Positions 1 through 32,927 of a DNA stretch of 64,000 nt are shown piece after piece. A program made the position numbers and the translations under genes. The notes beneath the pieces are model-generated. The model saw only the letters and a program-made list of their open reading frames with translations, was not told where the DNA came from and did not search any database. This DNA is from Macrostomum lignano (Eukaryota), in contig NIVC01002847.1 of NCBI GenBank assembly GCA_002269645.1, positions 62,001-126,000 on the forward strand. Reading direction: 5' to 3'. Within the stretch, counting starts at the first letter, position 1. Every line of letters begins with the position of its first letter.

Positions 1-1
1 T

Positions 2-1783
2 TTCTTACTGGCCCTGGGCTTGCTGCATCCTTTTGTGACGCTGGATAATCATGTTAAAAAAGCGGCACAAAAACAGAAGCCAGAAATATCAACTGATTCG
101 ACTGGCTTTCGTACTACGTGGAGTTATAATGTGACTTTGAGCAACTCCGCAGTTCGTCTTCATCAAATGAGCTCTACGAACTCGTCGGTTCGAGCGCCGG
201 ATGCCCAGCAGAACAAGGAGATCGCTCTGGTCGTGCTAGCCGCTACGAGGCCAGAAGTGCATCAGCTGGTGAGACAGTTGGTAGCTCAAAAGCCTGATAG
301 CGGATTCCGCATCATGATATCGCTCGATGGCACAGAAAAGCAAACAAACGAGGTCCTGCAGCAGATCGAGACGCCGGAGGTTAAACTGTTGCGGTTAAGC
401 GACGACAAGAGTCACAAATTCAAGCCTTCAAGCGACACCTACGTAAAGATTGCGCGGCATTACCTGCGCGTGCTGGACCATCTCATTCTGAAGCTGAACT
501 ACTCCTACGTTGTGCTCATGGAGGACGACCTGCTGATTGCTCCGGATTTCTACCAGTACTTCAGCTCGCTGCGAAGGGCGCTGGATTCGGACGAGAGCAT
601 CTTCTGCGTGTCCGCATGGAACGACAACGGTCAAATTGGTCTCGTGACCGAGGACCCACAGCTGCTGCACCGGACTGACTTCTTCCCGGGACTCGGCTGG
701 ATGATCAACCGGCGCCACTGGCTGCAGGTCAGGAAAGTATGGCCGAAGACGCAGTACGACGACTTCCTGAGGCTCTACATGCTGAATAATCGGCTGGTCT
801 GCGTGCGTCCCGAGCTGTCCCGGACGTTCAACATCGGGCGGAACGGAGGGCGAGTTTCGTCAGGAAAAAACGGGTACAGCTCGACGTTCTATCACAACTA
901 TCTGAGTCGGATGGCTCTAAACAGTTTCAATGTCACTCTGCTCGACAGCTCTATTGACAAGGTAATTGGTCGCTCAGCTGATATTAAGCTAGAAAAGTTT
1001 GCTCGCAGTCTACCTGTGATGAATGTTTCGACGCTGCTGTCCCAGCCGAAGCCGCCATCGGCTGTGCGTCTTCGCTACGCTTCAGCGGAAGAATTCATCG
1101 GCATAGCTGAGAGAATCGGCGCCATTCCGGAGGTGTGGTTCGGCGCCCCTCGCGCCTCCATCCTCGGAATATCCGTGATGTCGCTGAGAAGAACTCGAGT
1201 CTACATTGTTCCAGACAAACGGCTTCCCATAACTAAAAAGATACTAACACCAGAGCACGTGCGGAAGAAGCAGAAACGGCATCATAATAAAAAGCAAGAT
1301 CCAAAAAAGAACGACGATCCAAAGAAGAAAGAGGATCCTAAGAAGAAAAAGGATTCAAAGAAGAAAGAGGATACAAAAAGGAAACAGGATCCGAAGCAGA
1401 AAGAGGATCCTAAGAAGAAAAAGGATTCAAAGAAGAAAGAGGATACAAAAAGGAAACAGGATCCGAAGCAGAAAGAGGATCCTAAGAAGAAAAAGGATTC
1501 AAAGAAGAAAAAGGATACAAAAAGGAAACAAGATCCGAAGCAGAAAGAGGATCCTAAGAAGAAAAAAGATTCAAAGAGGAAAGAGGATACAAAAAGGAAA
1601 CAGTATCCGAAGCAGAAAGAGGATCCTAAGAAGAAAAAAGATTCAAAGAGGAAAGAGGATACAAAAAGGAAACAGTATCCGAAGCAGAAAGAGGATCCTA
1701 CGAAGAAAGAGGATTCAAGAAATGAAGCAGGATCAAAAGTAGGAATAAGATCTGAAAAAGAATCAGAACCAGAACAGAATTGA
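2..1783 (+). CDS. MGAT1-like: GT13 family beta-1,2-N-acetylglucosaminyltransferase I-like protein, copy 1 (5' end lies upstream of the window), with Lys-rich repeat tail
   Basis: Frame open from nt 2 (FLLALGLLHPF, end of type II TM). GnT-I motifs KIARHY, EDDLLIAPDFYQYF, CVSAWNDNG, RTDFFPGLGWM, WPK..DD, CVRPELSRT. Tail from nt 1298. Family is clear; orthology to MGAT1 is not established. Confidence 0.9.
   Translation, partial: FLLALGLLHPFVTLDNHVKKAAQKQKPEISTDSTGFRTTWSYNVTLSNSAVRLHQMSSTNSSVRAPDAQQNKEIALVVLAATRPEVHQLVRQLVAQKPDSGFRIMISLDGTEKQTNEVLQQIETPEVKLLRLSDDKSHKFKPSSDTYVKIARHYLRVLDHLILKLNYSYVVLMEDDLLIAPDFYQYFSSLRRALDSDESIFCVSAWNDNGQIGLVTEDPQLLHRTDFFPGLGWMINRRHWLQVRKVWPKTQYDDFLRLYMLNNRLVCVRPELSRTFNIGRNGGRVSSGKNGYSSTFYHNYLSRMALNSFNVTLLDSSIDKVIGRSADIKLEKFARSLPVMNVSTLLSQPKPPSAVRLRYASAEEFIGIAERIGAIPEVWFGAPRASILGISVMSLRRTRVYIVPDKRLPITKKILTPEHVRKKQKRHHNKKQDPKKNDDPKKKEDPKKKKDSKKKEDTKRKQDPKQKEDPKKKKDSKKKEDTKRKQDPKQKEDPKKKKDSKKKKDTKRKQDPKQKEDPKKKKDSKRKEDTKRKQYPKQKEDPKKKKDSKRKEDTKRKQYPKQKEDPTKKEDSRNEAGSKVGIRSEKESEPEQN
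1298..1740 (+). repeat. Coding 18-bp tandem repeat (hexapeptide D-[P/S/T]-K-x-K-x) with 72-bp higher-order unit
   Basis: Translation DPKKKK DSKKKE DTKRKQ DPKQKE repeated five times with minor variants. Confidence 0.9.
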
Positions 1784-2455
1784 GATACGACTAAAGAACT
1801 GATAGCCTGAGCCTCTATCTTTGAAGTCAAAATGACTGACACGAGAAACTTCACTGTCTGTTTTATCTCAAACTAGTTTTTACAAAAATCAGTACTTAGT
1901 GTTACTCCATTATGTGTGATTTGTTCCTTGTTCGAGTATGTCATACTCGATGTCCGACAGCTTTTAACTTCATTGTCTCTGTGGATGCGCATATACTTGA
2001 CTAGACCTGTTTACTGGATCACTTTACAACCTCTTTGTGTGTTGATTTTCAACCGTTTTTTGTTTTCGCTTGCGCATAATTGAGCTTTCTTTTGTTGAGT
2101 TTCTAGTTGACATTAGCTATTCTTCGTCAATATTTTTTCGTTGGGAAGGCCGGGAATTCCCGAGCGTTTTTAATCAGATAGTAGAAAAAGTTTCTGACAT
2201 TTGCAGGTAGCTTAATGAAGGAAACTTCTGAGAAAAAGTCTAGAACTACGCACGTATGAAGTTCAATTTTGTCTGCGCAGTCAATTGCACTGCGCCCACG
2301 CGAGGCTGCGTGTTTCTACTTGATTTTTGTCATTTTTACAAGCCTACTTGTCTAGCCTGTTGCCTGGTTATTAGTATCAATAAATACAGTTATATAATTG
2401 CAGAAAAGAATTTTCGTGCTTGATTGGCTTATTTAATTTTTTTCCTACCGACTTA

Positions 2456-3424
2456 CTTCAGGTGTGTCATAAGTAATGTCACTGATGTGAAAACAGACGA
2501 ACTTGCAATCGCAGATGAACAAAACTGTACCACTCAACAACATAGAGTCCCCCAATATTAATCACCCTCTGGCAGTGCTCATACAGCTTGTCCACCTCAG
2601 CCTGCAGGTGTTTTTCCTCCAACTGCCATAACCAGTGCAACGCAGCCTGTTTTACCTCTTCATGGTTTGCGAAACTCTTCTTGGAAAAGTCAGCCTTCAG
2701 CCATTTGAACAGGAATCTCTTGCAAAAGTTGAAGTCTGGGCTGTAGGGACTGTCAGAGCAGATTCACTTGCCATGCAGGCAGAAAATTCGAAACAGCCTT
2801 CAGGTGTGCAGCCGTGCGGTGTCCATCTGCCACAGAACCTTGTCCAGGTGACATGGATTTGACTGGAGAGTGCACCAGAGGTCTCCAGTGTGCCGGAAAA
2901 AGTCGATAAAGTACTGGCCATCGACCTTGGTGTTCGGTGGAGTTCTGCAGATGGAGACTCGTTTGTTTGGCGTGAAGGCTACCAGCAGCATGGTCTTCTT
3001 GTCCGAGATGGACTTCCTAGTCACCATCGGCCTGAAGTCCCCAGCTCCCAACCAGCAGCGATTATCTGCCTTGCTGCCCTTGCCATCCAGGTGGAGCCAG
3101 CTTTCATCCTCAGCAACCAGGCAGTTTAGGATGTCATTCAAGCCCCGGCTGCTAAACACCTTGCGGATCTGCTTGGTGCAGGCGTCTTGTCAAGATTCAT
3201 GATGATTTTTGTTCGCTGCATAGACGATTTTTCATTGCGTTGCACTTGCTAAATCTGCTTGGCGTATTCTTGCGATAGCTTGGGCCATAAACAACCTATG
3301 CACGTCTCAAATGCACTGCTATTGCTTCACTAAGTATACTTTGCAGCTACACTACCCACAAGTCCATGTGCCTACATATTTTAGACAGAGGCCTGCAGTG
3401 ACATTACTTATGACACACCCGAAG
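2456..3424 (-). mobile_element. Degenerate, internally deleted mariner (Tc1/mariner) transposon
   Basis: 29-bp TIRs 2456-2484 and 3396-3424 (1 mismatch) flanked by TA at 2454-2455 and 3425-3426. Minus-strand transposase remnants EDESW, QMDTARLH and SPYSPDFNFCKRFLFKWLK, with stops/frameshifts. Element absent at the homologous site (~8652) after copy 2. Confidence 0.9.
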
Positions 3425-3931
3425 TACCACCTACATACGAGAGTATATATGAATGCTGCGTATGCGTCTTGGATAGTTTACCTGTGTTTCAGTTTGTGTA
3501 GCAATCAAGCTTCATAATTGTTCCCCATTTTGAAAGTATAATATTCCCACAAATATTCTCAATTTGAAACGTTTGATAACTCATTAGTCAATTATCAGTA
3601 AGTTGAACACCGAATGTGCAAGCTGTCTGACACAATGAGTGAACTTGATTAAAGTATTGATAATACCCTATGAAGGGGTATAGATTAACAAAATACTTCA
3701 GTTGACTAATACCCCATGAAGTACAATGATTAGGATTCATTAGCATGGACAGCTCGACAAATGAACTGTCCCCTAATCGCTAATCGCTCTAACTCAGTCT
3801 TAGCTAAAAATGACCGATATCAAATAATCTAGGTCGCCCCATAGTAACCTCGCCCCGACACTGCCTCAGCCCCGAGCGGGCACTCTCGCTTTTGCTGGAA
3901 CTCTTTTCAGTAGAACTCTTACATACTTCAA

Positions 3932-5075
3932 GAAATTGAATGGGAAATCTGCATGCAGAAGCAAATTTTGTCCATAGACAGAATGAACGCCCTCACTATG
4001 GTATGAAATAGAATATCCAATTGCCGAAATTGAATGCTGCTTGACGAATACGACTGATGGTTGAAGTAGCTAAATGGTATATATTCCCCATTTATACCAG
4101 TGCTAGGGCAATAAATGGGTGGGGGAGCGGGGGGTGTGGGGGGCTTGAGTGACTTGTTTATTGACCGAGGCGAAGCCGAGGTCAATAAGCGAGGCACGAA
4201 TGCATTTTTGCCCTAGACACTTGGTATTAATGGGGAATATTATATGTATCCCTCAGTTGAATAGCATAAAGTACAAAGCTAAAAGCAAAAATGGCCATAG
4301 ACACTAGCATTAAGGTACTGTACCGCTAACTGAAAGACGCGCTCGTAAAAAGAAGAGAGACAACGCGAGTGCTTGGCTTAGCTAGCTAGTTAAAATGGCT
4401 ACCGAAAGATTTTTCAATCTGACTGACGAAGAAGTCAGTTCACTCATCGAAGGAACGGTTCCAACAAACACGCTAAAGAAATGTCGCTGGATGTTTGCTT
4501 CTTTCCAAGAGTGGCATGCGGCGAAGAAAGTACTCTGGTGTTCCGACAGAAAACCGTAAGCGCAATTCTATGCGGTCAAGTCGACAGTCAAACTCGTGAG
4601 ATCAGTACAAGGACCATGTCAACTGTGACTACACCCGATGGCAGTACTGCTACAACCGGGACGGACTTCTGTGAAACTACTGTGGTTCAAGGAACACCGC
4701 ACAAACTAATGCGGATTGAGGCTTGTGGTGACACTAATAAGGTGACCATCACATTCGTAAACAAGGACTAATCACTGTTATCTGCGTCATGTCTGCGTCT
4801 GCGTATATCACTGGAACTTAGACTATTGCACAAGTGCAATTGTTAAATGGTTACAATTTCATGTTGAATCGATTTCATTTTAAAATATAAAGTTCTCGTT
4901 TATTTGCACTCTGTGCCGGTGCAAATAAATCATTTATCTGCACCGGTGCAGATAAACGAAATAAACCATTAGAACATAGACTACTGCACCAGTGCAACTG
5001 GGGGATACATATAAAATGTTGAAATTGAATGTCAGCTTGTCGAAATAGAATGCGAGTTTTGTTGAAATTGAATGG
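3932..5075 (+). mobile_element. Internally deleted Crypton-like (tyrosine recombinase, DUF3504-type) DNA element; boundaries tentative
   Basis: Mini-ORF 4395-4559 MATERFFNLTDEEVSSLIEGTVPTNTLKKCRWMFASFQEW resembles a Crypton N-terminus. Overlapping frame gives QKTVSAIL...KVTITFVNKD*, resembling a Crypton C-terminus; catalytic core missing. Direct repeat GAAATTGAATGG at 3932-3943 and 5064-5075; 19-bp inverted repeat 4241-4259/4995-5013; hairpin 4158-4188. Confidence 0.6.
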
Positions 5076-5099
5076 AAAAAGGTGTAGTATGTTTAATCT

Positions 5100-5600
5100 C
5101 AGTCTGCGCTTAAAGACCACCCTCCACTACAGGGAGAACGCCAACCACTGAGACTTCCAGGTCAGCTGCTTCACGGATAGCTCCCTAAAAGACGGTATTG
5201 GCGGCTGTGGGGTCTGCATCCTGCTCAATGGATTGCAACTCGCGTCCGAGCACACAGCGGACTGTGCTGCAAGAACGCTAGTGGAAAGTTAATTGCCATC
5301 CCCTCGGGCAGTCAGGCCGGTCGCTCTGCCCCAAACTCCCGGACAGTAATCAGCCGAGTTCGGCAGCTCAACAGTCCGGTGCGTAAGAATTACCGCCGAG
5401 CAGAATCCCAGGCACGCAGGATTCCAGGGCGATGAGCTTGCTTACTCTCTTGCGGTCGAGTCCCTATCCCCTGATTTCAATCCCTGGCGCGCTCTCCATA
5501 AAAGGAGTTGGATGGATACAACCAACTGCCGCCAATCCTGACCGGAACCTTTGACCACGAGAGGCAGTGAGAAGCAATTACTATACAGCAATTACGACTC
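5100..5600 (+). pseudogene. Degenerate RNase H domain of a non-LTR retrotransposon (I-group-like LINE fragment)
   Basis: CFTDSSLKDGIGGCGVCI at 5167 and IPG/HAGFQGDELAYSLA at ~5405 (1-nt frameshift) match RNase HI motifs FTDGS and WIPGHAGIQGNELAD. Confidence 0.7.
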
Positions 5601-6010
5601 ATGGGAAAAGGCAAGAGCTCTGAGTAATTGATTGCCCTAAACCGTTCTATCGCCTATAGTACAAGCATCTGCTGAACTTGACTCATGTACAGCCCGTTGT
5701 CTCAGCGAAACCACTCTACTGTCTAACACTTTCAGATTCTTTTTAAAGCGCAAAATGTACCTATTTATTCCTTCAGTTTCTGTTTTAACCGGTGGCTCAT
5801 GAACAAACCAATGCTAAATGGGAGGCTTGTGCGATTGACTCTCATAAGAGCCAACTTAAAAGCACAGAGTTTGTACATACATTGCCTAGTCGTATGTTGT
5901 TCGTGCGTACACCCTTGCCCGTGGGAGTATCCATGTGCGTGTGACAGCGAAATGAACTGTCCAATACCAAAAAGGGCGGAGTATAGCCAGAATTCAAAGC
6001 TTCTGCGCTG
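5484..6010. repeat. Segmental duplication block upstream of GT13 copy 2, near-identical to 15430-15950
   Basis: Direct sequence match; ORF-track peptides 5799..6011 and 15739..15951 are nearly identical. Confidence 0.9.
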
Positions 6011-6276
6011 AGAAAACTTACTAGAATATCTACATTTATCTATATCCCGGCCGTAAAGTCGTAGCGTAATTTGCGAGCTTGGCAGTAAAGGCAGAGAAGA
6101 TAAGTGTTTATCATTAGTGTCTGTGCGTAAAGTTTTATATTCTAAGGCATGGGGCGATAAGCAGACTTCCTTACACGCTGACCTGCTTATGCAGTTTTAG
6201 CTACTCAGCGACGAGTAAAAGATTCGCTACTCAGTGAGTCTTTTCCTAACTTGATTTCGTCGAAAAACAGCATCCA

Positions 6277-7965
6277 ATGCTCGACTGCCTGCGGCGCGGT
6301 GGCCGGCTGTGCGCGACGCGCAGGCAAAGAGTTTTTATCCTGGCTTTCTTACTGGCCCTGGGCTTGCTGCATCCTTTTGTGATGCTGGATAATCATGTTA
6401 AAAAAGCGGCACAAAAACAGAAGCCAGAAATATCAACTGATTCGACTGGCTTTCGTAGTGCGTGGAGTTTTAATGTGACTTTGAGCAACTCCGCAGTTCG
6501 TCTTCATCAAATGAGCTCTACGAACTCGTCGGTTCGAGCGCCGGATGCCCAGCAGAACAAGGAGATCGCTCTGGTCGTGCTAGCCGCTACGAGGCCAGAA
6601 GTGCATCAGCTGGTGAGACAGTTGGTAGCTCAAAAGCCCGATAGCGGATTCCGCATCATGATATCGCTCGATGGCACAGAAAAGCAAACAAACGAGGTCC
6701 TGCAGCAGATCGAGACGCCGGAGGTTAAACTGTTGCGGTTAAGCGACGACAAGAGTCACAAATTCAAGCCTTCAAGCGACACCTACGTAAAGATTGCGCG
6801 GCATTACCTGCGCGTGCTGGACCATCTCATTCTGAAGCTGAACTACTCCTACGTTGTGCTCATGGAGGACGACCTGCTGATTGCTCCGGATTTCTACCAG
6901 TACTTCAGCTCGCTGCGAAGGGCGCTGGATTCGGACGAGAGCATCTTCTGCGTGTCCGCATGGAACGACAACGGTCAAATTGGTCTCGTGACCGAGGACC
7001 CACAGCTGCTGCACCGGACTGACTTCTTCCCGGGACTCGGCTGGATGATCAACCGGCGCCACTGGCTGCAGGTCAGGAAAGTTTGGCCGAAGACGCAGTA
7101 CGACGACTTCCTGAGGCTCTACATGCTGAATAATCGGCTGGTCTGCGTGCGTCCCGAGCTGTCCCGGACGTTCAACATCGGGCGGAACGGAGGGCGAGTT
7201 TCGTCAGGCAAAAACGGGTACAGCTCGACGTTCTATCACAACTATCTGAGTCGGATGGCTCAAAACAGTTTCAATGTCACTCTGCTCGACAGCTCTATTG
7301 ACAAGGTAATTGGTCGCTCAGCTGATATTAAGCTAGAAAAGTTTGCTCGCAGTCTACCTGTGATGAATGTTTCGACGCTGCTGTCCCAGCCGAAGCCGCC
7401 ATCGGCTGTGCGTCTTCGCTACGCTTCAGCGGAAGAATTCATCGGCATAGCTGAGAGAATCGGCGCCATTCCGGAGGTGTGGTTCGGCGCCCCTCGCGCC
7501 TCCATCCTCGGAATATCCGTGATGTCGCTGAGAAGAACTCGAGTCTACATTGTTCCGGACAAACGGCTTCCCATAACTAAAAAGATACTAACACCAGAGC
7601 ACGTGCGGAAGAAGCAGAAAAAGGATCCTAAGAAGAAAAATGATTCAAAGAAGAAAGAGGTTACAAAAAAGAAACAGGATTCAAAGAAAAAAGAGGTTAC
7701 AAAAAAGAAACAGGATCGAAAGCAGAAGGTGGATCCGAAGCAGAAAGAGGATCCTAAGAAGAAAAAGAATCTTAAGAAGCAAAAAGATCAAAAGAAAAAG
7801 GAGGATTCAAAGCAGAAAGAGGATCCAAAGCAGAAGGAGGATCCTAAAAAGAAAAATAATCTTAAGAAGCAAAAAGATCAAAAGAAAAAGGAGGATCCAA
7901 AGCAGAAAGAGGATCCTAAGAAGAAAGAGAATCGTAAGAAGAAAAAGGGTTCAAAGAATAAATAA
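6277..7965 (+). CDS. MGAT1-like: GT13 family GnT-I-like glycosyltransferase, copy 2 (562 aa, type II membrane, Lys-rich tail)
   Basis: Complete intronless ORF: short basic cytoplasmic N-terminus, TM VFILAFLLALGLLHPF, stem, GT13 motifs as copy 1, about 18 hexapeptide repeats from 7624. Confidence 0.92.
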   Translation: MLDCLRRGGRLCATRRQRVFILAFLLALGLLHPFVMLDNHVKKAAQKQKPEISTDSTGFRSAWSFNVTLSNSAVRLHQMSSTNSSVRAPDAQQNKEIALVVLAATRPEVHQLVRQLVAQKPDSGFRIMISLDGTEKQTNEVLQQIETPEVKLLRLSDDKSHKFKPSSDTYVKIARHYLRVLDHLILKLNYSYVVLMEDDLLIAPDFYQYFSSLRRALDSDESIFCVSAWNDNGQIGLVTEDPQLLHRTDFFPGLGWMINRRHWLQVRKVWPKTQYDDFLRLYMLNNRLVCVRPELSRTFNIGRNGGRVSSGKNGYSSTFYHNYLSRMAQNSFNVTLLDSSIDKVIGRSADIKLEKFARSLPVMNVSTLLSQPKPPSAVRLRYASAEEFIGIAERIGAIPEVWFGAPRASILGISVMSLRRTRVYIVPDKRLPITKKILTPEHVRKKQKKDPKKKNDSKKKEVTKKKQDSKKKEVTKKKQDRKQKVDPKQKEDPKKKKNLKKQKDQKKKEDSKQKEDPKQKEDPKKKNNLKKQKDQKKKEDPKQKEDPKKKENRKKKKGSKNK

Positions 7966-9176
7966 GGTTTGAAAAGGAATCGGAAGCAGAAAGGAATTAA
8001 GATGTGACTAAAAAGTAGTAGCCTGAGCTTCTTTTTAAGAAATCAAAATGGCTGACCCAAGAAACCCCACTGCAGTTTCATCTCAAACTAGTTTTTACAA
8101 AATCAGTACTCAGTGCTACTCCATGATGTACGAGTATGTGTGATTTCTTTCCTGTTCGAGTATGTCATACTAGATGTCCGGCAGCCTTCATGTTCATTAT
8201 CTTTATTGATGCGCATATACGCGCCTAAGACCTGTATATTGAATGACTGTACAAGTGAGATTTTCGTGTATTTGTTATTAGCGCTGTATGTTTACGTTTG
8301 CGCATTATTCAGCCCTCCATTGTTAAGTTTCTGGTTGATAAAAAGATTTAAATTCTTGGGTTAATATTTATCGTTGGGAAGGCCAGGGTTTCCGAGCATT
8401 GACAATCGCGTCGCAGCAAAAATCCGACATTTTCAGGCATTGCGCGTAACTCAACGATATTCCTTCTGAGAAATAGTCTAGAACTATAAAGTTCATTACT
8501 CAACTAGAACTCAACTAGAACTATTTGAATTTTGTTGTTACCTTTTCATGCCTACTTGCCCAGACTATTGCTTGGTTAATAGTAAATGAAAACTTATATT
8601 TGCAGAAGAGACGTTTCGCGCTTTATTGGTTCATTTAATTTTTTCCTACCGACTTACCTACATACGAGAGTAAATATGAATGCTGCGTATGCGTCTTGAA
8701 TAGTTTACCTGTTTTTCAGTTTGTGTAGCAATAAAGCTTCATAATTTTTCCCCATTTTGAAGGTATAATATTGCAACAAATATTCTCAATTTGAAACGTT
8801 TGAAAACTAATTAATCAATTATCAGTAAGTTGAACTCCGAATGTGCAAGCTGTCTGACACAATGAGTGAACTTTAGTGGACAGTAATTAGCCGAGTTCGG
8901 TGTTATGCCAACCATTATCCTAGGCGGAAAAGTATTCGGCTGAATAACTTTGGATGCGTATTTTATCTGGACCCAGATTGAATACGGCACGACATAAGTC
9001 ATGCGAGGCGAACTCCTAGGCTGATTTCTTTCTGGAGTTTACGAGATTAAAAACCTGTCAATAATCCCAGTTTGAGCCGTTATTTGATATCATCGACATG
9101 AATACTGCCGAAGTAAATGAACTACGCTGGACTTCGTGCACCTGGCTTTCTTATTTTGAGCTACTAATACATAAAC

Positions 9177-10687: not shown

Positions 10688-10723
10688 CACGAATAGGTGA
10701 TTTAAAGAATTAGAATTTCTAAT

Positions 10724-10955
10724 TGTTGGTCTTCTTATCCAATTGGGTAACTTAGGAAACCAAAATGCTGCTTTGGGGATTTGAGATTTCAGCTCTCTCT
10801 TAGAGCGTGCAACCAAATTCTTACGAGCGTATATTATCTGCGGCTCTCTTTAGTCATCGCAGTTTAAAACATAACAATTACAGGATTGTGTTTCCATAGA
10901 CAACATCAATCTATTGATAGCACTGCTAAAACATATAAGGCGTCATATGGCTACA
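10724..10955 (-). repeat. 3' LTR of Mag-like element (232 bp)
   Basis: Matches 14612-14835 with a few substitutions and two indels; preceded on minus strand by PPT AAAAAAAGGAGGAG (10956-10969). Confidence 0.95.
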
Positions 10956-11073
10956 CTCCTCCTTTTTTTAGTTTTACTGTCCAGCGGCAGGATAATGATT
11001 AATAAAAAGGAATGTTGTTTTCAGACAGCAATTTTGTCACAATAACCACTTATTAAGTAATAACACTTTCACA

Positions 11074-11830
11074 TCACATAGGTTGTCCCAGTTGATCGTA
11101 TCTCAGTCTGTCAGGCGGTTGTCTATGGCGTTTGGTATACTGGTTATTGGTGACTGGCCGCGATGCTGCCATCGCCTCAGTCTCACTGGTCTCCTTGGCA
11201 TCTTGCAGTTCAGTAGCCGGCTGCGCTACTTGATGATGTGTCTCGCCGGTTTCTGGGATCCTGGGTTTCGTCTGTCCAATGTGCTTTCTTAACACTTTTC
11301 CATCTTCTCCTTCGACGTTGACAATGACTTTTCCTTCAGATCCGATAATCACGCCAGGGGCCCATTTCTTGCTGTGATCGTTGTAGACTCTGGCCCACAC
11401 AGGTTGTCTCGCTAGTTGAATGATCGGGCAGCGCAGTAGATGTCCTCTCATGAGTTCAGCTGGCGCTTGACCTGTTGTGGAGTGCTTTGCGTTTCGATAC
11501 TGCAGCAAAACCTGTCGATACTGGCTTGCATGTCGTTCGAATCTTGTGCTGCACGAAGTGCATCATCAAGTTCATCAGGTGGACTTCGGCCCACTTGCTG
11601 TAGGCGTCGATCATGATGAGACAGAACTTCCCATTCTTGAAGGGGCCGCAAAGTCTATGTGAACCCGGCTCCACTTCTCTGTCTCCTGAGGCCAGGAGGT
11701 CCACCCGCCTACTGAATAATCCTTTGCGTCTGACAGTTTTTACACGTCTTTGCCTGGAGTTCGATTTCCTTATCGATTGAAGGCCACCACACACACTGTC
11801 GGGCGATAGATTTCATCTTATCAGCACCCA
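11074..11830 (-). pseudogene. Frameshifted, partly deleted integrase of Mag-like element
   Basis: GPFKNGKFCLIMIDAYSKWAEV and LLQYRNAKHSTTGQAPAELMRG in different frames. Confidence 0.8.
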
Positions 11831-12025
11831 AGTAGTGTCCATTGTGCAGTCCTCAGTACGTAGCTCCGTAGCGTATCTGGTACCACAATTCGAAGTCCTC
11901 TGAACAGGATTCCGCTCTCGATAGACAGTTCCTCTTGTATCCTGGAATACTCCGTGCCATAGCTCTACCAATTCTAGTCCATCCATACTTCACCTGTGCG
12001 AAAACTTTCCGCATCAGTGGATCTT

Positions 12026-13399
12026 TCAGAGACTCCTGTCGAACCTTTTCTTTGTCATTGGGAAATCCAAAATGGTGTCTTGAACAGAACTCACGTCAAA
12101 TTGTTCTGATTCAGTGTGCGTTGACTTCAGCCTTGATAGAGCGTCGGCGACCGGGATCTCTTCCGAGCGGCGGCACTCGACTTCATAGTTGTACTGCATG
12201 AGAGCAATAGCCCATCGCTGAATCCGGGCTGAAGCCAAACTGGTGATGCTTTTTGACGGATCGAATATGAATTTCAACGGATGATGGTCTGTCACCAGTG
12301 TGAACTTGCGCCCGTACAGGTATTTGTGGAGGCGCTTAACGGCCCAGATGATAGCCAAGGCCTCCCGCTCTATCTGTGCGTAGTTTCTGTCAGTCTTGCT
12401 CAGAGTTTTTGAGATGAAGAGTACAGGTCCATTAGATTGCTCAAGCACAGCCCCGATTCCATATGGGGATGCGTCGGTGGTAAGCCTGGTCACCGGGTCA
12501 CAAGGGTCGAACGGCTTTATTACTTTCGATTTAAGGATATTATTCTTGATTTTGTTGAAGGCAGATTGCTCTTGCACGTCCCAATGCCACTTCTCGTCCT
12601 GTGGGATTAACTTTGCCAACGGTTCCTTTATGGTAGCGAGGTTCTGGATGAACCTGGAGTACAACTCGGCAAGTCCCAGGAAAGATCGGAGTTCCTTTGG
12701 AGACGTTGGTTCTTTTAGTCCTCTAATGACGTCCATCTTGTCAATGGCTGGGCATATTCCCTCTTCGGTGATATCCAAACCCAGGAATTTCACTCGCTTA
12801 GTCTTGATGAAACTTTTCTGGTAGTTGACCTCTACATTGTTCTCTTTCAGGATGCTTTTTACAGTCTCCAGCTGGTCGTCGTGCTCGCGCTCTGTTCGGC
12901 CAAAAATCAGGATGTCGTCCTGGTAGCTAACGGCATTCTTCTGCGACGCTAGCAACTTGTCCATATAGTTTTGGAATATGGCCGGTGCCTGTTTGACCCC
13001 GTAAGACAGCAACTGGGGCTCGTAGAGTCCAAATGGCGTGCTCAGTGTTAGAACACTCGCCGATGCCTCGTCCACAGGAAGCTGCAGATAAGCATTTGTT
13101 AGATCCAGGACAGAAAAGGTCTTGGCTCCTCCAAGTTGGCTCAACACGTCCTCGATGCTCGGTGTAGTGGAGATCATGTCGCACAACGACCTGTTAACCG
13201 TCACTTTATAATCACCACACAGCCTGATCTTACCATTCTGCTTTCTGACAACGACGATAGGTGTAGCCCAGTCACTCTGATCCACCTTCCGCAGGACTCC
13301 ATCATTCACGAGCTTATCCAGTTCTTCCTTCACACTGTCTCGAAGACCGTACGGGATAGGTCTGGGCTTGAGGAACACGGGTATTGTTCCCTCCCTCAA
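12026..13399 (-). pseudogene. RT-RNase H region of Mag-like pol
   Basis: WATPIVVV, RLCGDYK, LDLTNAYLQL, YQDD, TDASPYGIGAVL, EREALAI, TDHHPL; in frame with upstream gag-PR across a TAA at 13412-13414. Confidence 0.9.
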
Positions 13400-13411
13400 A
13401 GTTAGATGAGC

Positions 13412-14611
13412 TTAGTATTGCTTCACCCGATAGATATTCAGACCAGGTTCCAAGGCATGCATCCACTGCAGTCCATAGATGTTGGGAGCATCTGACTTGT
13501 CCATAATATATACTGGTAGTTTCTTAGAGTTGCCATCGTATTTCACAGTGACCATTGCCTCGCCTAGAATAGGAACAGCATGACCTTGGAAGTCATTGAG
13601 TCTCTTGTTCGTCGGCAATACATCGGGGATGACTGACAGGCACTCGAATGTAGTTTTCGATATGAGAGAGACATCCGCTCCCGTGTCGAACACCATATCA
13701 ACTGTAGTTCCGTTTATGCAGACTTCACGGGCGATCCTTTGCCGGGATGATAGCGAAAAAATCTGACCGTGCTGTTCTCCATCCTCTGCTTCATCATCGA
13801 GTAAAGGATGTTGCTGCAGAAGTCGAACTCTTAATGTTGCTCGGCGTCCACTTGTTTGGGACTTTGCGGCTTTACACACCGCTTTCAGATGACCTGCTTT
13901 GCCACAGCTGTCGCATGTGAGCGCTTTGTGTCGACACTCAGTTTTGGTGTGTCCAGGTTTTCCGCAGCAGAAGCATGTGACTGCCTTACCCTGGTTTCGT
14001 TTGGCCGGCGCCTTTGCGTAGCGCTTCCACGACTTTCTCGTGTGCTGAGGTCGGCTGCTTTTTTGTCGCATGTGCAGAACATTTGAGCCGCTCATGTCCT
14101 TCTCTCCTCTTTGGACAGCCTCGCACGCTGCGGCGACAGCAGTGACATTCTCCCAGGTGAGATCCTTTAACTTCTCGGAGAGTAGTTTTCTTAGGATTTC
14201 ATTGCTCTTTAGGCCGAATATAAACTGGTCACGGAGTCGGTCCGAGTTATCGGCGAACTCGCAGTCCTCTGCTAGCTGCTTTAGCCTGCGACTGTAGGTC
14301 AGGATGTCTTCGCTGCTTTCTTGCTTCGCCTTGTGAAACTCTTATCTGCAGGCGATTACTGATTTCTCGCCTTTCACTTCTTTTTTAATTAGCAGCACCA
14401 AATCATCAAATGATTTTGTTTCCACTTTAGCAGGTAGTGTTGCATCTGCAAGAAAGTTGAACATCCTCTCGCCGATTAGAGCCAGGAAGGCGTCTCGTTT
14501 ATTGTCGTCCTTCCAGCCGTTAAGTTTGGCACTGATCTCGAAGCGCTGGATCCATCTATTCGGGTCCTCGCCGTCTTCCAGTGGTTCGATGGTTGGTAGC
14601 CTCGTCGCCAT
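13412..14611 (-). pseudogene. gag-protease of Mag-like element (one frameshift near 14340)
   Basis: MATRLPTIEPL..WIQRFE, LRDQFIFGL, CFCCGKPGHTKTEC and CDSCGKAGHLKAVC, FDTGADVS. Confidence 0.9.
14600..14610 (-). promoter_or_regulatory. Primer-binding site TGGCGACGAGG
   Basis: One nt inside the 5' LTR end; complementary to the 3' end of animal tRNA-Ser(GCU) as recalled (..CCUCGUCGCCA). Confidence 0.8.
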
Positions 14612-14835
14612 TGTTGGTCTTCTTATCCAATTGGGTAATTTAGGAAACCAAATGCTGCTTTGGGGATTTGAGATTTCAGCTCTCTCTTAGAGCGTGCAAC
14701 CAAATTCTTACGAGCTTATATTAGTCTCTTTAGTCATCGCAGTTTAAAACATAACAATTACAAGATTGTGTTTCCATAGACAACATCAATCTATTGATGG
14801 CACTGCTAAAACATAGAAGGCGTCATATGGCTACA
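14612..14835 (-). repeat. 5' LTR of Mag-like element (224 bp)
   Basis: Direct repeat of 10724-10955; TGTAGCC...GACCAACA on minus strand. Confidence 0.95.
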
Positions 14836-16881
14836 CTAATATTTGACAATAGTTTTAGGCTTCTAATTAAAATAATCGAAATGCTTGGTATGAACTAGAG
14901 ACTAAGAAAGGTTTCTAACTTGACTCACACAAAGAAACTTTGTGCTGAGGACCAATGTCAACTTAATGAAAGACCTAGAAAGCTCGTAGGACTTAATCGA
15001 TAAGGAAATTTGATAATTCAACATATGCTCGTAATTTCTTTGCTTATACATATATTTGTAAAATGTGCAGGATTTATCTAAAGGACAGGCTAAATTAGCT
15101 ATTTACGATAAATTTCTTTTTCACATCTTATAAATATGATAAAGTACATTGACTAATTTTGTGTACGAGTACTTCAATCAGTTCTGGATTGTTGTTGTCT
15201 TTTTGTTGCAATTTACTTTGCAGTAATCATTTTACCATTTATTGTCTTCTCGCAATGTTGGTATATTTTAAGACGAATAAGATAAGGCATAAGATAGTTT
15301 CTGCTCAGAGAGGAATTCAAGATGACCGAATGAGTTTGGATAACTTAAAAGTATCTGGCCAAATACGTTTGTCGTCTTATTTCATTCAGACGAATAAAAC
15401 AACGCAGAAATTCTATAAGACGTGACACACCGGCGCTCTCCATAAAAGGAGTTGGATGGATACAACCAACTGCCGCCAATCCTGACCGGAACCTTTGACC
15501 ACGAGAGGCAGTGAGAAGCAATTACTATACAGCAATTACGACCATGGGAAAAGGCTAGAGCTCTGGGTAATTACCCTAAACCGTTCTATCGCCTATAGTA
15601 CAAGCATCTGCTGAACTTGATTCATGTACAGCCCGTTGTCACAGCGAAACCACTCTGCTGGTCTAACACTTTCAGATTCTTTTTAAAGCGCAAAATGTAC
15701 CTATTTATTCCTTCAGTTTCTGTTTTAACCGGTGGCTCATGAACAAACCAATGCTAAATGGGAGGCTTGTGCGATTGACTCTCATAAGAGCCAACTTAAA
15801 AGCACAGAGTTTGTACATACATTGCCTAGTCGTATGTTGTTCGTGCGTACACCCTTGCCCGTGGGAGTATCCATGTGCGTGTGACAGCAAAATGAACTGT
15901 CCAATACCAAAAAGTGCGGAGTATAGCCAGCATTCAAAGCTTCTGCGCTAAGCAAACTAACTAGAATATATAGCTGCTCAATATAAAACCGCCTAACACA
16001 GTGCTGGCGTTATTATGCATTTCTTTCTTTCTTTGACAAAGCCAAAGCCAACAAAGCCATTCTCTCGAGCTCTTCTATGCTGACCAATGCGCAGACAATT
16101 TCAGCCTCACCCCCCTCTCTCCCATCCAACCCCTGCACCCAGCCAAGGAGTTCTAGAACTAGGACCTGGAATACCAACTCTACCTTTAGCACCTAACGTC
16201 GTATTTTCGTATCAATTGAGGCCTAGAGCTAGAGCAGTGGTTCAATTTACCGCGGCAGACGGGCGAGTCTTGTGTATCAGTCACATTTTACTAAAACTGC
16301 CATTACCAACCAACCATAACCAAATTTCAGAAACTCTGCCTCATTTTAAAGCTGAATAAGTTCCTACTTCTGCTGTTGCTGCAATTCGAAGAACTTATTG
16401 AGATTTACATTAAGAGGGACTTTGAATAAATTTGTCAAGATGAGTGGAAGTTATGGCAATTTTAGCAAGAAGTGGCACAGAAACTCGCCTATCTACTTGG
16501 GTTGAAATTGAACAGTTACATCAGCCTCAATAGGTACTAAATGCGTGTTTGGAGTAGAGTTGGCACTCCAGGATCAAGTTCTAAAAATCTTGCTCTGCCT
16601 CCATTCCTACCTCTGCGTAGTGTACTCCGATGTTTGGCACGAAATATTCTCTCTGTTTGTAGCGCCAATGCAACTGCATGGTTACTTAAATGGCCCGAAC
16701 TCCCGGTCGTAAATAGGGTCTGTGCGTAAAGTTTTACATTCTAAGCCATGAAGCTATAAGCAGACTTCAGTCCCTACACGCTGGCCTGCTTATGCGTTTT
16801 CAGCTACTCATGGCCCCTTGAGTAAAATTCGCTACTCAGTGCGTCTTTCCTTAACTTGATTTCGTCGAAAAACAGCATCCA

Positions 16882-18534
16882 ATGCTCGACTGCCTGCGGC
16901 GCGGTGGACGGCTGTGCGCGACGCGCAGGCAAAGAGTTTTTATACTGGCTTTCTTACTGGCTCTGGGCCTGCTGCATCCTTTTGTGACGCTGGATAATCA
17001 TATTAAAAAAGCGGCACAAAAACAGAAGCCAGAAATATCAACTGATTCGACTGGCTTTCGTACTACGTGGAGTTCTAATGTGACTTTGAGCAACTCCGCA
17101 GTTCGTCTTCATCAAATGAGCTCTACGAACTCGTCGGTTCGAGCGCCGGATGCCCAGCAGAACAAGGAGATCGCTCTGGTCGTGCTAGCCGCTACGAGGC
17201 CAGAAGTGCATCAGCTGGTGAGACAGTTGGTAGCTCAAAAGCCCGATAGCGGATTCCGCATCATGATATCGCTCGATGGCACAGAAAAGCAAACAAACGA
17301 GGTCCTGCAGCAGATCGAGACGCCGGAGGTTAAACTGTTGCGGTTAAGCGACGACAAGAGTCACAAATTCAAGCCTTCAAGCGACACCTACGTAAAGATT
17401 GCGCGGCATTACCTGCGCGTGCTGGACCATCTCATTCTGAAGCTGAACTACTCCTACGTTGTGCTCATGGAGGACGACCTGCTGATTGCTCCGGATTTCT
17501 ACCAGTACTTCAGCTCGCTGCGAAGGGCGCTGGATTCGGACGAGAGCATCTTCTGCGTGTCCGCATGGAACGACAACGGTCAAATTGGTCTCGTGACCGA
17601 GGACCCACAGCTGCTGCACCGGACTGACTTCTTCCCGGGACTCGGCTGGATGATCAACCGGCGCCACTGGCTGCAGGTCAGGAAAGTTTGGCCGAAGACG
17701 CAGTACGACGACTTCCTGAGGCTCTACATGCTGAATAATCGGCTGGTCTGCGTGCGTCCCGAGCTGTCCCGGACGTTCAACATCGGGCGGAACGGAGGGC
17801 GAGTTTCGTCAGGAAAAAACGGGTACAGCTCGACGTTCTATCACAACTATCTGAGTCGGATGGCTCAAAACAGTTTCAATGTCACTCTGCTCGACAGCTC
17901 TATTGACAAGGTAATTGGTCGCTCAGCTGATATTAAGCTAGAAAAGTTTGCTCGCAGTCTACCTGTGATGAATGTTTCGACGCTGCTGTCCCAGCCGAAG
18001 CCGCCATCGGCTGTGCGTCTTCGCTACGATTCAGCGGAAGAATTCATCGGCATAGCTGAGAGAATCGGCGCCATTCCGGAGGTGTGGTTCGGCGCCCCTC
18101 GCGCCTCCATCCTCGGAATATCCGTGATGTCGCTGAGAAGAACTCGAGTCTACATTGTTCCGGACAAACGGCTTCCCATAACTAAAAAGATACTAACACC
18201 AGAGCACGTGCGGAAGAAGCAGAAAAAGGATCCTAAGAAGAAAAATGATTCAAAGAAGAAAGTGGTTACAAAAAAGAAACAGGATTCAAAGAAAAAAGAG
18301 GTTACAAAAAAGAAACAGGATCCAAAGCAGAAAAAGGATTATAAGAAGAAAAAGAATCTTAAGAAGCAAAAAGATCAAAAGAAAAAGGAGGATCCAAAGC
18401 AGAAACAGGATCCTAAGAAGAAACATAATCTTAAGAAGCAAAAAGATCAAAAGAAAAAGGAGGATCCTAAGAAGAAAGAGGATCCTAAGAAGAAAGAGGA
18501 TCGTAAGAAGAAAAAGGGTTCAAAGAATAAATAA
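16882..18534 (+). CDS. MGAT1-like: GT13 family GnT-I-like glycosyltransferase, copy 3 (550 aa)
   Basis: Complete intronless ORF, core nearly identical to copies 1 and 2; about 16 hexapeptide repeats from 18229. Confidence 0.92.
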   Translation: MLDCLRRGGRLCATRRQRVFILAFLLALGLLHPFVTLDNHIKKAAQKQKPEISTDSTGFRTTWSSNVTLSNSAVRLHQMSSTNSSVRAPDAQQNKEIALVVLAATRPEVHQLVRQLVAQKPDSGFRIMISLDGTEKQTNEVLQQIETPEVKLLRLSDDKSHKFKPSSDTYVKIARHYLRVLDHLILKLNYSYVVLMEDDLLIAPDFYQYFSSLRRALDSDESIFCVSAWNDNGQIGLVTEDPQLLHRTDFFPGLGWMINRRHWLQVRKVWPKTQYDDFLRLYMLNNRLVCVRPELSRTFNIGRNGGRVSSGKNGYSSTFYHNYLSRMAQNSFNVTLLDSSIDKVIGRSADIKLEKFARSLPVMNVSTLLSQPKPPSAVRLRYDSAEEFIGIAERIGAIPEVWFGAPRASILGISVMSLRRTRVYIVPDKRLPITKKILTPEHVRKKQKKDPKKKNDSKKKVVTKKKQDSKKKEVTKKKQDPKQKKDYKKKKNLKKQKDQKKKEDPKQKQDPKKKHNLKKQKDQKKKEDPKKKEDPKKKEDRKKKKGSKNK

Positions 18535-32684: not shown

Positions 32685-32893
32685 TGTAGGTTGCGTTTGG
32701 TTTGGGCCGTCGGGGTGGGGGCTGCTCTATTAGTATATGTACTTGCATCTCGCTTTCTTCTCTGTACATGCCCACCACCCCAGTTGGGTGAGTCACTTTA
32801 ATCGATCTATCATCGCTGACTATTTAATCGCTCGTAAATTATCTTGCATCAAAATATACTTCGTAAACTTACTCTAAATTCTCGGCTCTTACA
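32685..32893 (+). repeat. 5' LTR
   Basis: Direct repeat of 37496-37704 with three substitutions. Confidence 0.97.
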
Positions 32894-32894
32894 T

Positions 32895-32905
32895 TGGTGG
32901 CAGCG
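32895..32905 (+). promoter_or_regulatory. Primer-binding site TGGTGGCAGCG
   Basis: Immediately after 5' LTR; matches the tRNA-Leu(AAG/UAG)-type PBS TGGTGGCAGCGGTGGG as recalled (11 nt). Confidence 0.75.
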
Positions 32906-32927
32906 AGAACCCAGTGCAAGTGCACTC

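What the first reader, a model, noticed from the sequence alone, without database searches (positions are those of the whole stretch)
2..18534. Tandem triplicated GnT-I-like enzymes, each with a luminal Lys-rich repeat tail
Seen: three intronless GT13 genes with type II topology. After the catalytic domain each continues into roughly 16-24 hexapeptides of pattern D-[P/S/T/Q]-K-x-K-x, about half lysine. Established: canonical GnT-I ends shortly after the GT-A domain, and its C-terminus faces the Golgi lumen. Inference: a polycationic, copy-variable tail is an unusual add-on that could tether the enzyme to polyanionic substrates or glycans, drive luminal condensation/retention, or act after secretion. 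Amplification plus a tunable tail suggests a lineage-specific glycosylation system rather than housekeeping N-glycan processing. This is the best candidate for an undescribed system in the window.
Basis: partly seen in the sequence, partly recalled or inferred. Interest (0 to 1): 0.78.

Follow-up and report, generated by a model that had tools for sequence, protein, structure and literature searches.

The report
Flatworm GnT-I genes with lysine-repeat tails
Three neighbouring copies of a flatworm (Macrostomum lignano) sugar-adding Golgi enzyme each end in a long, length-variable, lysine-rich repeat that was found in no other member of this enzyme family and looks selected to stay translated; what the tail does is unknown.

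Summary
The window is contig NIVC01002847.1 of the Macrostomum lignano Mlig_3_7 assembly. It carries three same-strand, single-exon GT13 (GnT-I-like) genes: copy 1 at 2-1783 (start cut off by the window), copy 2 at 6277-7965, copy 3 at 16882-18534.

Each has a type II signal anchor and a confidently modelled GT-A domain with the donor, metal and catalytic residues intact. Each ends in 18-23 copies of an 18-bp unit encoding [E/Q/K]-D-[P/S/T]-K-[K/Q/R]-K (36-49% Lys, net charge about +38, predicted disordered).

- **Unique:** none of 194 other GT13 homologs, nor the two other M. lignano paralog groups, has such a tail.
- **Old array, converted cores:** flanks are 75-86% identical, but catalytic cores are at least 99.5% identical (gene conversion). 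Tails diverge quickly, always by multiples of 18 bp.
- **Tail looks coding:** substitutions are preferentially synonymous in the lysine frame (ω 0.24-0.53, against 0.6-5 in shifted frames). Stop-free survival is unlikely under neutrality.
- **Transcript evidence is mixed:** one RNA-derived model reads through the tail; the model for copy 1 stops just before it.

Function is inferred only. A luminal polycationic tether for polyanions is my preferred reading; a tolerated low-complexity expansion is the main rival. This is a new variant of a known enzyme kind, of moderate interest.

The parts
2..1783 (+). GT13 gene copy 1. The CDS is cut at the window start; the full gene is about 616 aa and starts 68 bp upstream on the contig. 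Catalytic core about 218-1228; tail codons 1256-1780; stop 1781-1783.
   Evidence: The annotated CDS in the public record (P0239) ends at window 1255 without a stop codon.
1298..1718 (+). Copy 1 coding minisatellite: 23.4 units of 18 bp, or 5.8 units of a 72-bp higher-order repeat at 95% identity.
6277..7965 (+). GT13 gene copy 2 (562 aa). Signal anchor at aa 19-37, disordered stem, GT-A catalytic domain at aa ~96-430, tail from aa 439 (nt 7591).
7612..7962 (+). Copy 2 coding minisatellite: 19.5 units of 18 bp. An AATAAA hexamer overlaps the last codons and the stop (AAG AAT AAA TAA).
16882..18534 (+). GT13 gene copy 3 (550 aa), with the same architecture as copy 2. Tail from nt 18196.
18217..18536 (+). 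Copy 3 coding minisatellite: 17.7 units of 18 bp.
6115..8873 (+). Duplicated segment shared with 16714-19469 (copies 2 and 3). Flanks about 86% identical, catalytic core 99.8%, tail 96%.
10722..14837 (-). Degenerate gypsy-type LTR retroelement inserted between copies 2 and 3. LTRs at 10722-10957 and 14610-14837 (94.5% identical); gag/protease 13412-14095; RT/RNase H 12026-13399. It is absent from the related locus L004.

Best explanation
What it is (shown): an old three-gene tandem array of GT13 β-N-acetylglucosaminyltransferase genes (GnT-I-like) in Macrostomum lignano. Each gene encodes a type II membrane protein with an intact GT-A catalytic domain. The coding cores are kept nearly identical by gene conversion and purifying selection.

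At the C-terminal junction, an 18-bp (six-codon) minisatellite has expanded in frame. It probably grew from a short Lys-codon seed. The result is a 102-168 aa tail that is proline-punctuated, predicted disordered and polycationic (net charge about +37 to +39). Its length changes by whole repeat units between paralogs and between related contigs. Its substitutions are filtered to keep the [E/Q/K]-D-[P/S/T]-K-x-K composition.

How it works (inferred):
- The enzyme transfers GlcNAc from UDP-GlcNAc in the Golgi lumen, as GnT-I does.
- The tail, which faces the lumen, acts as a sequence-independent electrostatic tether for polyanionic partners such as sulfated or acidic glycans, or acidic secretory cargo.
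- This would bias where the enzyme sits or which cargo it meets. It could also hold the enzyme on acidic matrix after the stem is cleaved and the enzyme is shed.
- Tail length would tune avidity.

Likelihoods: descriptive part about 0.85; tail translated and under constraint about 0.7; polyanion-tether mechanism about 0.3.
For: **Enzyme**
- Pfam GNT-I at E 1e-70 and rabbit GnT-I at E 1e-48.
- The AlphaFold core has pLDDT above 90 and matches 1FOA at TM 0.88, against 0.68 for POMGNT1.
- E197, D199 and D276 are invariant across 64 homologs; R106, D132, H176 and D198 are conserved in at least 90%. These correspond to rabbit R117, D144, H190, E211-D213 and D291.
- Core dN/dS is 0.08-0.3.

**Gene conversion**
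- Core identity is 99.5-99.8% (dS at most 0.017) while flanks are 75-86% identical.

**Tail is coding and constrained**
- In a frame-agnostic DNA alignment, ω is 0.24-0.53 in the Lys frame, against 0.58-1.0 and 0.8-5.5 in the shifted frames.
- In the comparisons involving window copies, length differences are multiples of 18 bp, apart from a 17+133-bp gap pair in c1 vs L001b that I attribute to alignment.
- All three window arrays are stop-free. At flank-like neutral divergence that has a probability of 0.008-0.16 per tail.
- The always-Lys codon varies only synonymously. The hypervariable first base of NAG codons is G, C or A but never T.
- No A-run exceeds 6 nt, whereas shuffled Lys codons give runs of 9-10.6 nt.
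- The RNA-derived gene model Mlig013550.g1 reads contiguously through the tail to a stop.

**Tail properties**
- Net charge +37 to +39 and pLDDT 34-60.
- Unique among GT13.

**Context**
- M. lignano already secretes Lys/Arg-rich repeat proteins whose function depends on binding polyanionic sugars (Mlig-ap1, PMC6410801).
Against: - There is no direct evidence of translation, localisation or binding.
- The annotated CDS for copy 1 on this very contig is 3'-partial and stops exactly at the start of the tail. Copies 2 and 3 are not annotated at all.
- On other contigs, one array continues past a frameshift and an in-frame TAG (L001b), and one has a nonsense codon 9 codons before the normal stop (L004). 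These are either PacBio assembly errors or real decay.
- The +1 frame of the repeat is also nearly open, so an open frame alone is weak evidence.
- The pairwise ω values are not independent, and repeat alignments are ambiguous.
- No expression data were found.
- Two paralog groups manage without the tail.
Confidence: 0.4

Rival explanations
1. Tolerated low-complexity expansion. The tail is translated, but it is a by-product of replication slippage in a repeat-rich, neopolyploid genome. Selection only removes variants that harm the enzyme (stops, frameshifts, hydrophobic or aggregating residues, ribosome-stalling poly(A) tracks). The tail has no function of its own.
For: - The tail diverges about as fast as the non-coding flanks between copy 1 and copies 2/3 (78-83% against 75-78% identity).
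- Length varies freely, from 102 to 224 aa.
- Paralogs Mlig021685 and Mlig027550 lack it. Mlig021685 carries a different small microsatellite, (AAGCCG)x4, at the same junction.
- The window is packed with minisatellites.
- Some copies on other contigs are truncated without obvious consequence.
Against: - ω of 0.24-0.53, specific to the Lys frame, means the residue pattern is conserved, not merely the absence of stops.
- Asp at position 2 and Lys at positions 4 and 6 are nearly invariant.
- The tail has persisted in all copies through about 0.15-0.3 substitutions per site of flank divergence.
- Net charge is similar (+37 to +39) in the three window copies despite different lengths.
Confidence: 0.3
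2. The tail is not part of the working protein. Either mRNAs are cleaved and polyadenylated or processed before or inside the A-rich repeat, or the tail is removed soon after synthesis by dibasic-site proteases. The mature enzyme would then be a conventional GnT-I-like protein.
For: - The public CDS for copy 1 ends without a stop at window 1255, right before the tail.
- An AATAAA hexamer lies at the start of the copy 1 tail (1286-1291).
- The tail is full of KK, KR and RK dibasic sites.
Against: - A transcript ending before the tail would lack a stop codon, and non-stop mRNAs are normally degraded.
- The Mlig013550.g1 model reads through the identical junction into the tail.
- In copies 2 and 3 the AATAAA sits at the stop codon, as expected if the tail is inside the mRNA.
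- Frame-specific purifying selection and stop avoidance are not expected for untranslated sequence.
- No R-x-[KR]-R furin site is present in copy 2.
Confidence: 0.15
3. The tail is an expression or topology regulator. A long polybasic nascent chain would slow ribosomes or translocation, setting enzyme dosage according to tail length rather than binding anything.
For: Polylysine stretches are known to slow translation (my own knowledge). Tail length is variable. Lys codons are about half AAA.
Against: The tails avoid long A-runs (maximum 6 nt, at most 10 A per 12 nt), which looks like selection against stalling rather than for it. Acidic residues and prolines interrupt every Lys cluster.
Confidence: 0.05

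Closest known systems
MGAT1 / GnT-I (CAZy GT13; rabbit enzyme, PDB 1FO8/1FOA)
   Same: PF03071 domain, GT-A fold (TM 0.88), EDD motif, catalytic Asp, type II anchor and disordered stem.
   Different: - Only about 30-36% identical.
- Sits on a long branch outside the metazoan MGAT1 cluster in an NJ tree.
- Lacks the Cys pair of the rabbit enzyme (AATR and SLDG replace ACDR and SQDC).
- Lacks the usual W-x-GYD-x-W ending and instead carries a 102-168 aa polylysine-rich repeat.
- Acceptor specificity is untested.
POMGNT1 (GT13 with an added stem lectin domain)
   Same: It is a GT13 catalytic domain fused to an accessory module thought to bring the enzyme to its glycan substrate. That makes it a conceptual precedent for a tethering add-on.
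   Different: The accessory module there is a folded N-terminal domain, not a disordered C-terminal repeat. The window proteins match GnT-I better than POMGNT1 (E 1e-48 against 5e-21; TM 0.88 against 0.68).
Nematode GnT-I paralogs (C. elegans GLY-12/13/14 type)
   Same: Lineage-specific multiplication of GnT-I genes. Nematode-type hits also carry a lineage-specific C-terminal extension of 62-64 aa.
   Different: The nematode extension contains cysteines, is not repetitive and is 11-17% Lys. It is not a minisatellite. The statement that C. elegans has three GnT-I genes is from my own knowledge.
Polybasic glycosaminoglycan-binding regions of secretory enzymes (EC-SOD/SOD3 C-terminal heparin-binding tail; polybasic region of polysialyltransferases)
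   Same: Clusters of Lys/Arg in a luminal or extracellular enzyme that hold it on polyanionic glycans or acidic substrate patches. This is the mechanism I propose (own knowledge).
   Different: Those regions are short (about 10-35 aa) and non-repetitive. Here the tail is 17-23 tandem hexapeptides with interleaved acidic residues. Binding was not tested.
Mlig-ap1 adhesive protein of M. lignano (PMC6410801)
   Same: Same organism. It is a secreted protein with Lys/Arg-rich tandem repeats whose function depends on charge interactions with polyanionic sugars.
   Different: It is a structural glue protein, not an enzyme. The repeat sequences are unrelated, and no link to these GT13 genes is known.
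KKE/D-repeat tails of nucleolar proteins (Nop56, Nop58, dyskerin)
   Same: Very similar composition: alternating Lys blocks and Asp/Glu at a C-terminus (own knowledge).
   Different: Those tails are nuclear and bind RNA. Here the tail follows a luminal domain behind a signal anchor.

Membership tests
GT13 / GnT-I (MGAT1-like) | GNT-I (PF03071) catalytic domain above the curated threshold | tested here: met
   238-242 bits against a cut-off of 25.4 for all three copies.
GT13 / GnT-I (MGAT1-like) | GT-A fold superimposable on solved GnT-I | tested here: met
   The AlphaFold model core has pLDDT above 90. Foldseek top hit is 1FOA: E 2e-33, TM 0.88 (normalised to the target), rmsd 2.6 Å.
GT13 / GnT-I (MGAT1-like) | EDD metal/donor motif and catalytic-base Asp (rabbit E211-D213 and D291), plus donor-binding Arg, Asp and His | tested here: met
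   M-E197-D198-D199-L and Y-D276-D277-F align to the rabbit motifs. E197, D199 and D276 are invariant, and R106, D132, H176 and D198 are at least 90% conserved, in 64 homologs. The residue roles come from my knowledge of the rabbit structure paper.
GT13 / GnT-I (MGAT1-like) | Type II topology (short basic cytoplasmic N-terminus, one signal anchor, luminal stem and catalytic domain) | tested here: met
   Net charge +5 before a 19-residue hydrophobic segment. The model shows a helix at residues 12-46 followed by a disordered stem at 49-85. The topology itself is predicted, not measured.
GT13 / GnT-I (MGAT1-like) | Orthology to metazoan MGAT1 | tested here: inconclusive
   All the best non-self hits are annotated MGAT1, at 30-36% identity. 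In an NJ tree, however, the M. lignano clade is a long branch outside the animal MGAT1 cluster. No other flatworm sequences were available.
GT13 / GnT-I (MGAT1-like) | β1,2-GlcNAc transfer to the α1,3-mannose arm of Man5GlcNAc2 | not testable with these tools
   This needs an enzyme assay.
POMGNT1 | N-terminal stem (carbohydrate-binding) domain before the GT13 domain | tested here: not met
   Only about 95 residues precede the catalytic domain. They are the TM helix plus a disordered stem. The match to POMGNT1 is weaker.
Coding minisatellite (VNTR) tail | Repeat unit a multiple of 3, kept in frame with the upstream CDS, with copy number differing between paralogs or alleles | tested here: met
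   - 18-bp unit with 0% indels.
- Tail lengths are 168, 114, 102, 120 and 224 aa.
- Copy 1 and L001a differ by 144 bp, copy 3 and L004 by 36 bp, and copies 2 and 3 by two 18-bp gaps.
Polybasic polyanion-binding tail (EC-SOD type) | Salt-sensitive binding to heparin or sulfated glycans through a luminal or extracellular basic cluster | not testable with these tools
   Only composition is shown: net charge +37 to +39, 36-49% Lys.

The most novel reading that the evidence does not exclude
The lysine-repeat tail is a functional, length-tunable luminal module that binds polyanions or drives condensation. It would direct a divergent GnT-I-like enzyme to particular acidic or sulfated secretory cargo, for example gland or granule contents. 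That would define a Macrostomum-specific glycosylation route separate from housekeeping N-glycan processing, and would be the first case of a Golgi glycosyltransferase targeted by a disordered polycationic repeat.
Probability: 0.2. Interest if true: 0.65.

Novelty: new variant of a known kind. Interest (0 to 1): 0.42.

Why it matters
Golgi glycosyltransferases are thought to find their place and their substrates through the transmembrane and stem region or through folded lectin-type add-ons. A disordered polycationic repeat that varies in copy number, sits on the luminal end of a GnT-I-like enzyme and is kept under selection would be a different and tunable way to do this.

M. lignano has transgenesis and RNAi, so tail-deletion experiments are feasible. 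The locus is also a clean example of two processes acting side by side: gene conversion freezing catalytic cores while an attached coding minisatellite evolves freely. If the tail proves to be a merely tolerated expansion, the finding is an ordinary lineage-specific oddity.

Tried and rejected
**Searches that found nothing**
- Exact-sequence look-ups of copies 2 and 3 in public assemblies: not on record.
- Expression data: gene IDs Mlig013550, Mlig021423, Mlig021685 and Mlig027550 appear in no paper's main text and in no held supplement of three M. lignano papers.
- Orthologs in other Macrostomum species or other flatworms: none in the databases. The next-best hits are about 36% identical.
- Tail-only protein search: only the M. 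lignano gene itself.
- Literature precedents for Lys-rich C-terminal tails on GnT-I, or for flatworm MGAT1: nothing relevant.

**Ideas rejected**
- Assembly artefact or collapsed duplicate. Rejected because flanks, tails and the LTR insertion are distinct, and independent contigs carry the same genes.
- Retrogene poly(A) origin of the tail. Rejected because the tail is a structured 18-bp unit with A-runs of at most 6 nt, and the tail-less paralogs are also single-exon.
- C-terminal KKXX/KXKXX ER-retrieval motif. Rejected because the lysines are not at -3/-4 or -3/-5, and the end is predicted to be luminal.
- 'No T at NAG first positions' as a stand-alone proof. Downgraded because of ascertainment: L001b and L004 do show such stops.
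- Open reading frame alone as evidence of coding. Rejected because the +1 frame is also almost open.


Full report
**Source and observation.** The window is 100% identical to contig NIVC01002847.1 of the Macrostomum lignano Mlig_3_7 assembly, GCA_002269645.1. M. lignano is a free-living, neopolyploid, repeat-rich flatworm.

Copy 1 is in frame from base 2 to a stop at 1783, and its first ~23 codons lie upstream of the window. Copy 2 is 6277-7965 (562 aa) and copy 3 is 16882-18534 (550 aa). All three match Pfam GNT-I at E about 1e-70 and rabbit GnT-I at E 1e-48.

**The enzyme part.** A basic N-terminus (net +5) is followed by a 19-residue hydrophobic segment, which fits a type II signal anchor.

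AlphaFold2, run with a 64-sequence alignment, gives four regions:
- a TM helix;
- a disordered stem (residues 49-85);
- a GT-A catalytic domain with pLDDT mostly above 90;
- a low-confidence tail (pLDDT 34-60).

Foldseek places rabbit GnT-I first (1FOA, TM 0.88, rmsd 2.6 Å), ahead of POMGNT1 at 0.68.

The residues that hold UDP-GlcNAc and Mn2+ and act as catalytic base in the rabbit enzyme are conserved. Their roles are from my own knowledge of that structure. E197-D198-D199 corresponds to rabbit EDD 211-213, D276 to D291, and R106, D132 and H176 to R117, D144 and H190.

Between copies, the 1011-nt core differs at only 2-5 positions, with dN/dS 0.08-0.3. Against a copy on another contig the value is 0.14-0.18. 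These look like active enzymes.

**The tail.** Right after the catalytic domain (…YIVPDKRLPITKKILTPEHVRKKQK) each gene continues into an 18-bp tandem array. The arrays lie at 1298-1718, 7612-7962 and 18217-18536, with 23.4, 19.5 and 17.7 units, no indels, and 72- or 90-bp higher-order periods. The 18-mer occurs 40 times in the window, only in these arrays, against 0.13 expected.

The hexapeptide consensus is [E/Q/K]-D-[P/S/T]-K-[K/Q/R]-K. Lysine makes up 38%, 46% and 49% of the three tails. Net charge is +39, +37 and +39.

**Is the tail unusual?** Yes.
- Among 194 GT13 homologs whose catalytic C-terminus aligns, the median extension is about 1 residue. These homologs came from one word-indexed search and one exhaustive HMMER search of 1.8 billion representatives.
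- Only M. lignano sequences carry a K-rich tail.
- Nematode-type proteins have an unrelated Cys-containing extension of 62-64 aa.
- A search with the tail alone against 5.8 billion proteins returned only the M. lignano gene.
- The two other M. lignano GT13 paralog groups are 68-77% identical and also single-exon. They end 18-25 residues after the domain: Mlig021685 (P0002) and Mlig027550 (P0003).
- Mlig021685 has a small (AAGCCG)x4 = KPKPKPKP microsatellite at the homologous junction. This suggests a Lys-codon seed that expanded differently in each lineage.

**Evolution of the array.** The array is not young. The 3' flanks are 75-78% identical between copy 1 and copies 2/3. Both flanks are 86% identical between copies 2 and 3. 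A degenerate LTR retroelement (10722-14837) separates copies 2 and 3 and is absent from the related contig L004.

Despite this, the catalytic cores and the linker up to the tail are 99.5-100% identical, with dS at most 0.017. This is the signature of gene conversion confined to the coding core.

The tails behave differently. They are 78-83% identical between copy 1 and copies 2/3, and 96% identical between copies 2 and 3. In the comparisons involving window copies, length differences are multiples of 18 bp, apart from one 17+133-bp gap pair in c1 vs L001b that I attribute to alignment.

Two other contigs of the same assembly carry the same kind of genes with different tail lengths. L001a has 120 aa against 168 aa in copy 1, a difference of exactly 2 x 72 bp. 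L001b has 224 aa. L004 is 36 bp shorter than copy 3. So the tail is a true copy-variable coding minisatellite.

**Is the tail translated and constrained?** There is no direct evidence, and the indirect evidence has several lines.

(i) On a frame-agnostic nucleotide alignment, substitutions between tails give ω of 0.24-0.53 in the Lys frame. The same alignments read in the +1 and +2 frames give 0.58-1.0 and 0.8-5.5.

(ii) The always-Lys codon 4 varies only AAG/AAA. Second codon positions are nearly invariant. The hypervariable first base of codon 1 is G, C or A but never T, which would give the stop TAG.

(iii) I simulated neutral evolution at the per-lineage divergence seen in the flanks (0.075-0.15). 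A stop-free Lys frame survives with probability 0.008-0.16 per tail, yet all three window tails are intact.

(iv) No tail contains an A-run longer than 6 nt, or more than 10 A in any 12 nt. About half the Lys codons are AAA, and shuffling the Lys codons gives runs of 9-10.6 nt. The tails therefore avoid the poly(A) tracks known to stall ribosomes (own knowledge).

(v) Mlig_3_7 gene models are derived from RNA-seq and a de novo transcriptome (PMC5730564). The model Mlig013550.g1 (PAA77108.1, P0099, on L004) reads contiguously through the tail to a stop.

(vi) In copies 2 and 3 an AATAAA overlaps the last codons and the stop codon.

**Caveats.**
- The annotated CDS for copy 1 on this very contig (P0239, 441 aa, no stop) ends at window 1255, exactly before the tail. 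Copies 2 and 3 are not annotated.
- That truncation could be an assembly, mapping or boundary-cutting artefact in a multi-copy repeat. It could also be a real early 3' end, although such an mRNA would lack a stop codon. I could not resolve this.
- On other contigs, L001b's array continues after a 1-nt frameshift and then contains an in-frame TAG. L004 has AAG→TAG nine codons before the normal stop.
- Those contigs also have 1-nt indels inside the otherwise conserved catalytic cores. PacBio errors or decay of redundant homeologs are both possible.
- The +1 frame of the repeat is almost open too, so openness alone proves little.
- The pairwise comparisons are not independent.

**Mechanism.** The following are shown or strongly supported: a GT13 enzyme with an intact active site, type II topology (so the C-terminus is luminal), and a disordered tail of about +38 net charge with regular (--)(P)(+++) charge patterning.

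The rest is inferred. The tail most plausibly acts through charge, as a tether to polyanionic luminal or extracellular partners such as sulfated or acidic glycans and acidic cargo. It could influence Golgi sub-localisation, cargo preference or retention after shedding.

There are three conceptual precedents. The first two are from my own knowledge.
- The polybasic heparin-binding tail of EC-SOD.
- The polybasic region of polysialyltransferases.
- In the same animal, the Lys/Arg-repeat glue protein Mlig-ap1, whose function is blocked by heparin-like polyanions (PMC6410801).

I put this mechanism at about 0.3. The main rival, at about 0.3, is a tolerated slippage product under only 'do no harm' selection. 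Smaller possibilities are that the tail is absent from the mature protein (about 0.15) or acts as a translational attenuator (about 0.05).

**Housekeeping or specialised?** I cannot tell. All M. lignano GT13 proteins recovered form one divergent, long-branched clade. It is 30-36% identical to other animals' MGAT1 and lies outside the metazoan MGAT1 cluster in an NJ tree. No other flatworm sequences and no canonical M. lignano MGAT1 appeared among the named hits, but the hit lists are truncated and the genome itself could not be searched.

**Verdict.** Its function, and even its presence in mature mRNA and protein, still need RNA and protein data. It is a new variant of a known enzyme kind and of moderate interest.

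Noticed in passing
window 1-10255 = L005 9069-19323: The window is contig NIVC01002847.1 of M. lignano assembly GCA_002269645.1, from about position 62,001. The only annotated gene in this stretch is a 3'-partial CDS for copy 1 that stops at window 1255, just before the tail. Copies 2 and 3 are unannotated.
   Followed up: partly
window 218-1276, 6562-7620, 17167-18225: Gene conversion tract. The catalytic cores plus linker are 99.5-100% identical, while the 5' and 3' flanks are 75-86% identical. The homogenised tract ends where the tails begin to differ.
   Followed up: yes
window 10722-14837 (-) and ORF 10121-10687 (+): A degenerate gypsy-type LTR retroelement (LTRs 94.5% identical, with gag/protease and RT/RNase H ORFs) is inserted between copies 2 and 3. 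It is absent from the related contig L004. The neighbouring 188-aa ORF (10121-10687, no Pfam hit) is present in both.
   Followed up: partly
window 21770-23254 (+): A 494-aa ORF with many hydrophobic segments and no Pfam hit lies downstream of copy 3. A same-length ORF with no Pfam call lies at the corresponding position downstream of the GT13 gene in L004 (9128-10612), so it is probably a conserved neighbour; I did not align the two.
   Followed up: no
window ~32685-37704 (+) and 27091-28149: A second gypsy-like element with protease, RT, RNase H and integrase ORFs lies in a 56-60% GC block. It is bounded by 209-bp repeats that are 98.6% identical (32685-32893 and 37496-37704). A separate RT fragment lies at 27091-28149.
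   Followed up: partly
window 38414-62101: At least ten unrelated tandem arrays (periods 23, 19, 340, 25, 31, 22/92/161, 23, 30, 30 and 35 bp) are packed into 24 kb. A strongly purine-skewed block lies at 48-50 kb (GC skew 0.65).
   Followed up: no
L001 10001-11706 and 16046-17866+; L004 4234-5822: Related contigs carry the same genes with 1-nt frameshifts in the catalytic core (L001a, L004). L001b has a frameshift plus an in-frame TAG inside its longer array. L004 has a nonsense codon 9 codons before the normal stop. These are either PacBio indel errors or decay of redundant homeologous copies.
   Followed up: partly
L002 7330-7419; L003 7440-7491: The tail-less paralogs end in short hydrophobic peptides (…SRRFWFF and …SRSFLFL) that are homologous to each other. 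Mlig021685 has an (AAGCCG)x4 microsatellite (KPKPKPKP) at the position where the long tail starts in the window genes.
   Followed up: partly
window 1241-1258 (also 7576-7593 and 18181-18198): The junction before the tail reads aTACTAACaccAG|AG, which resembles a branch point plus a 3' splice (or trans-splice) acceptor. It lies within 2 nt of where the copy 1 CDS model ends. The same sequence is read through in the Mlig013550.g1 model, so this is probably coincidence.
   Followed up: no
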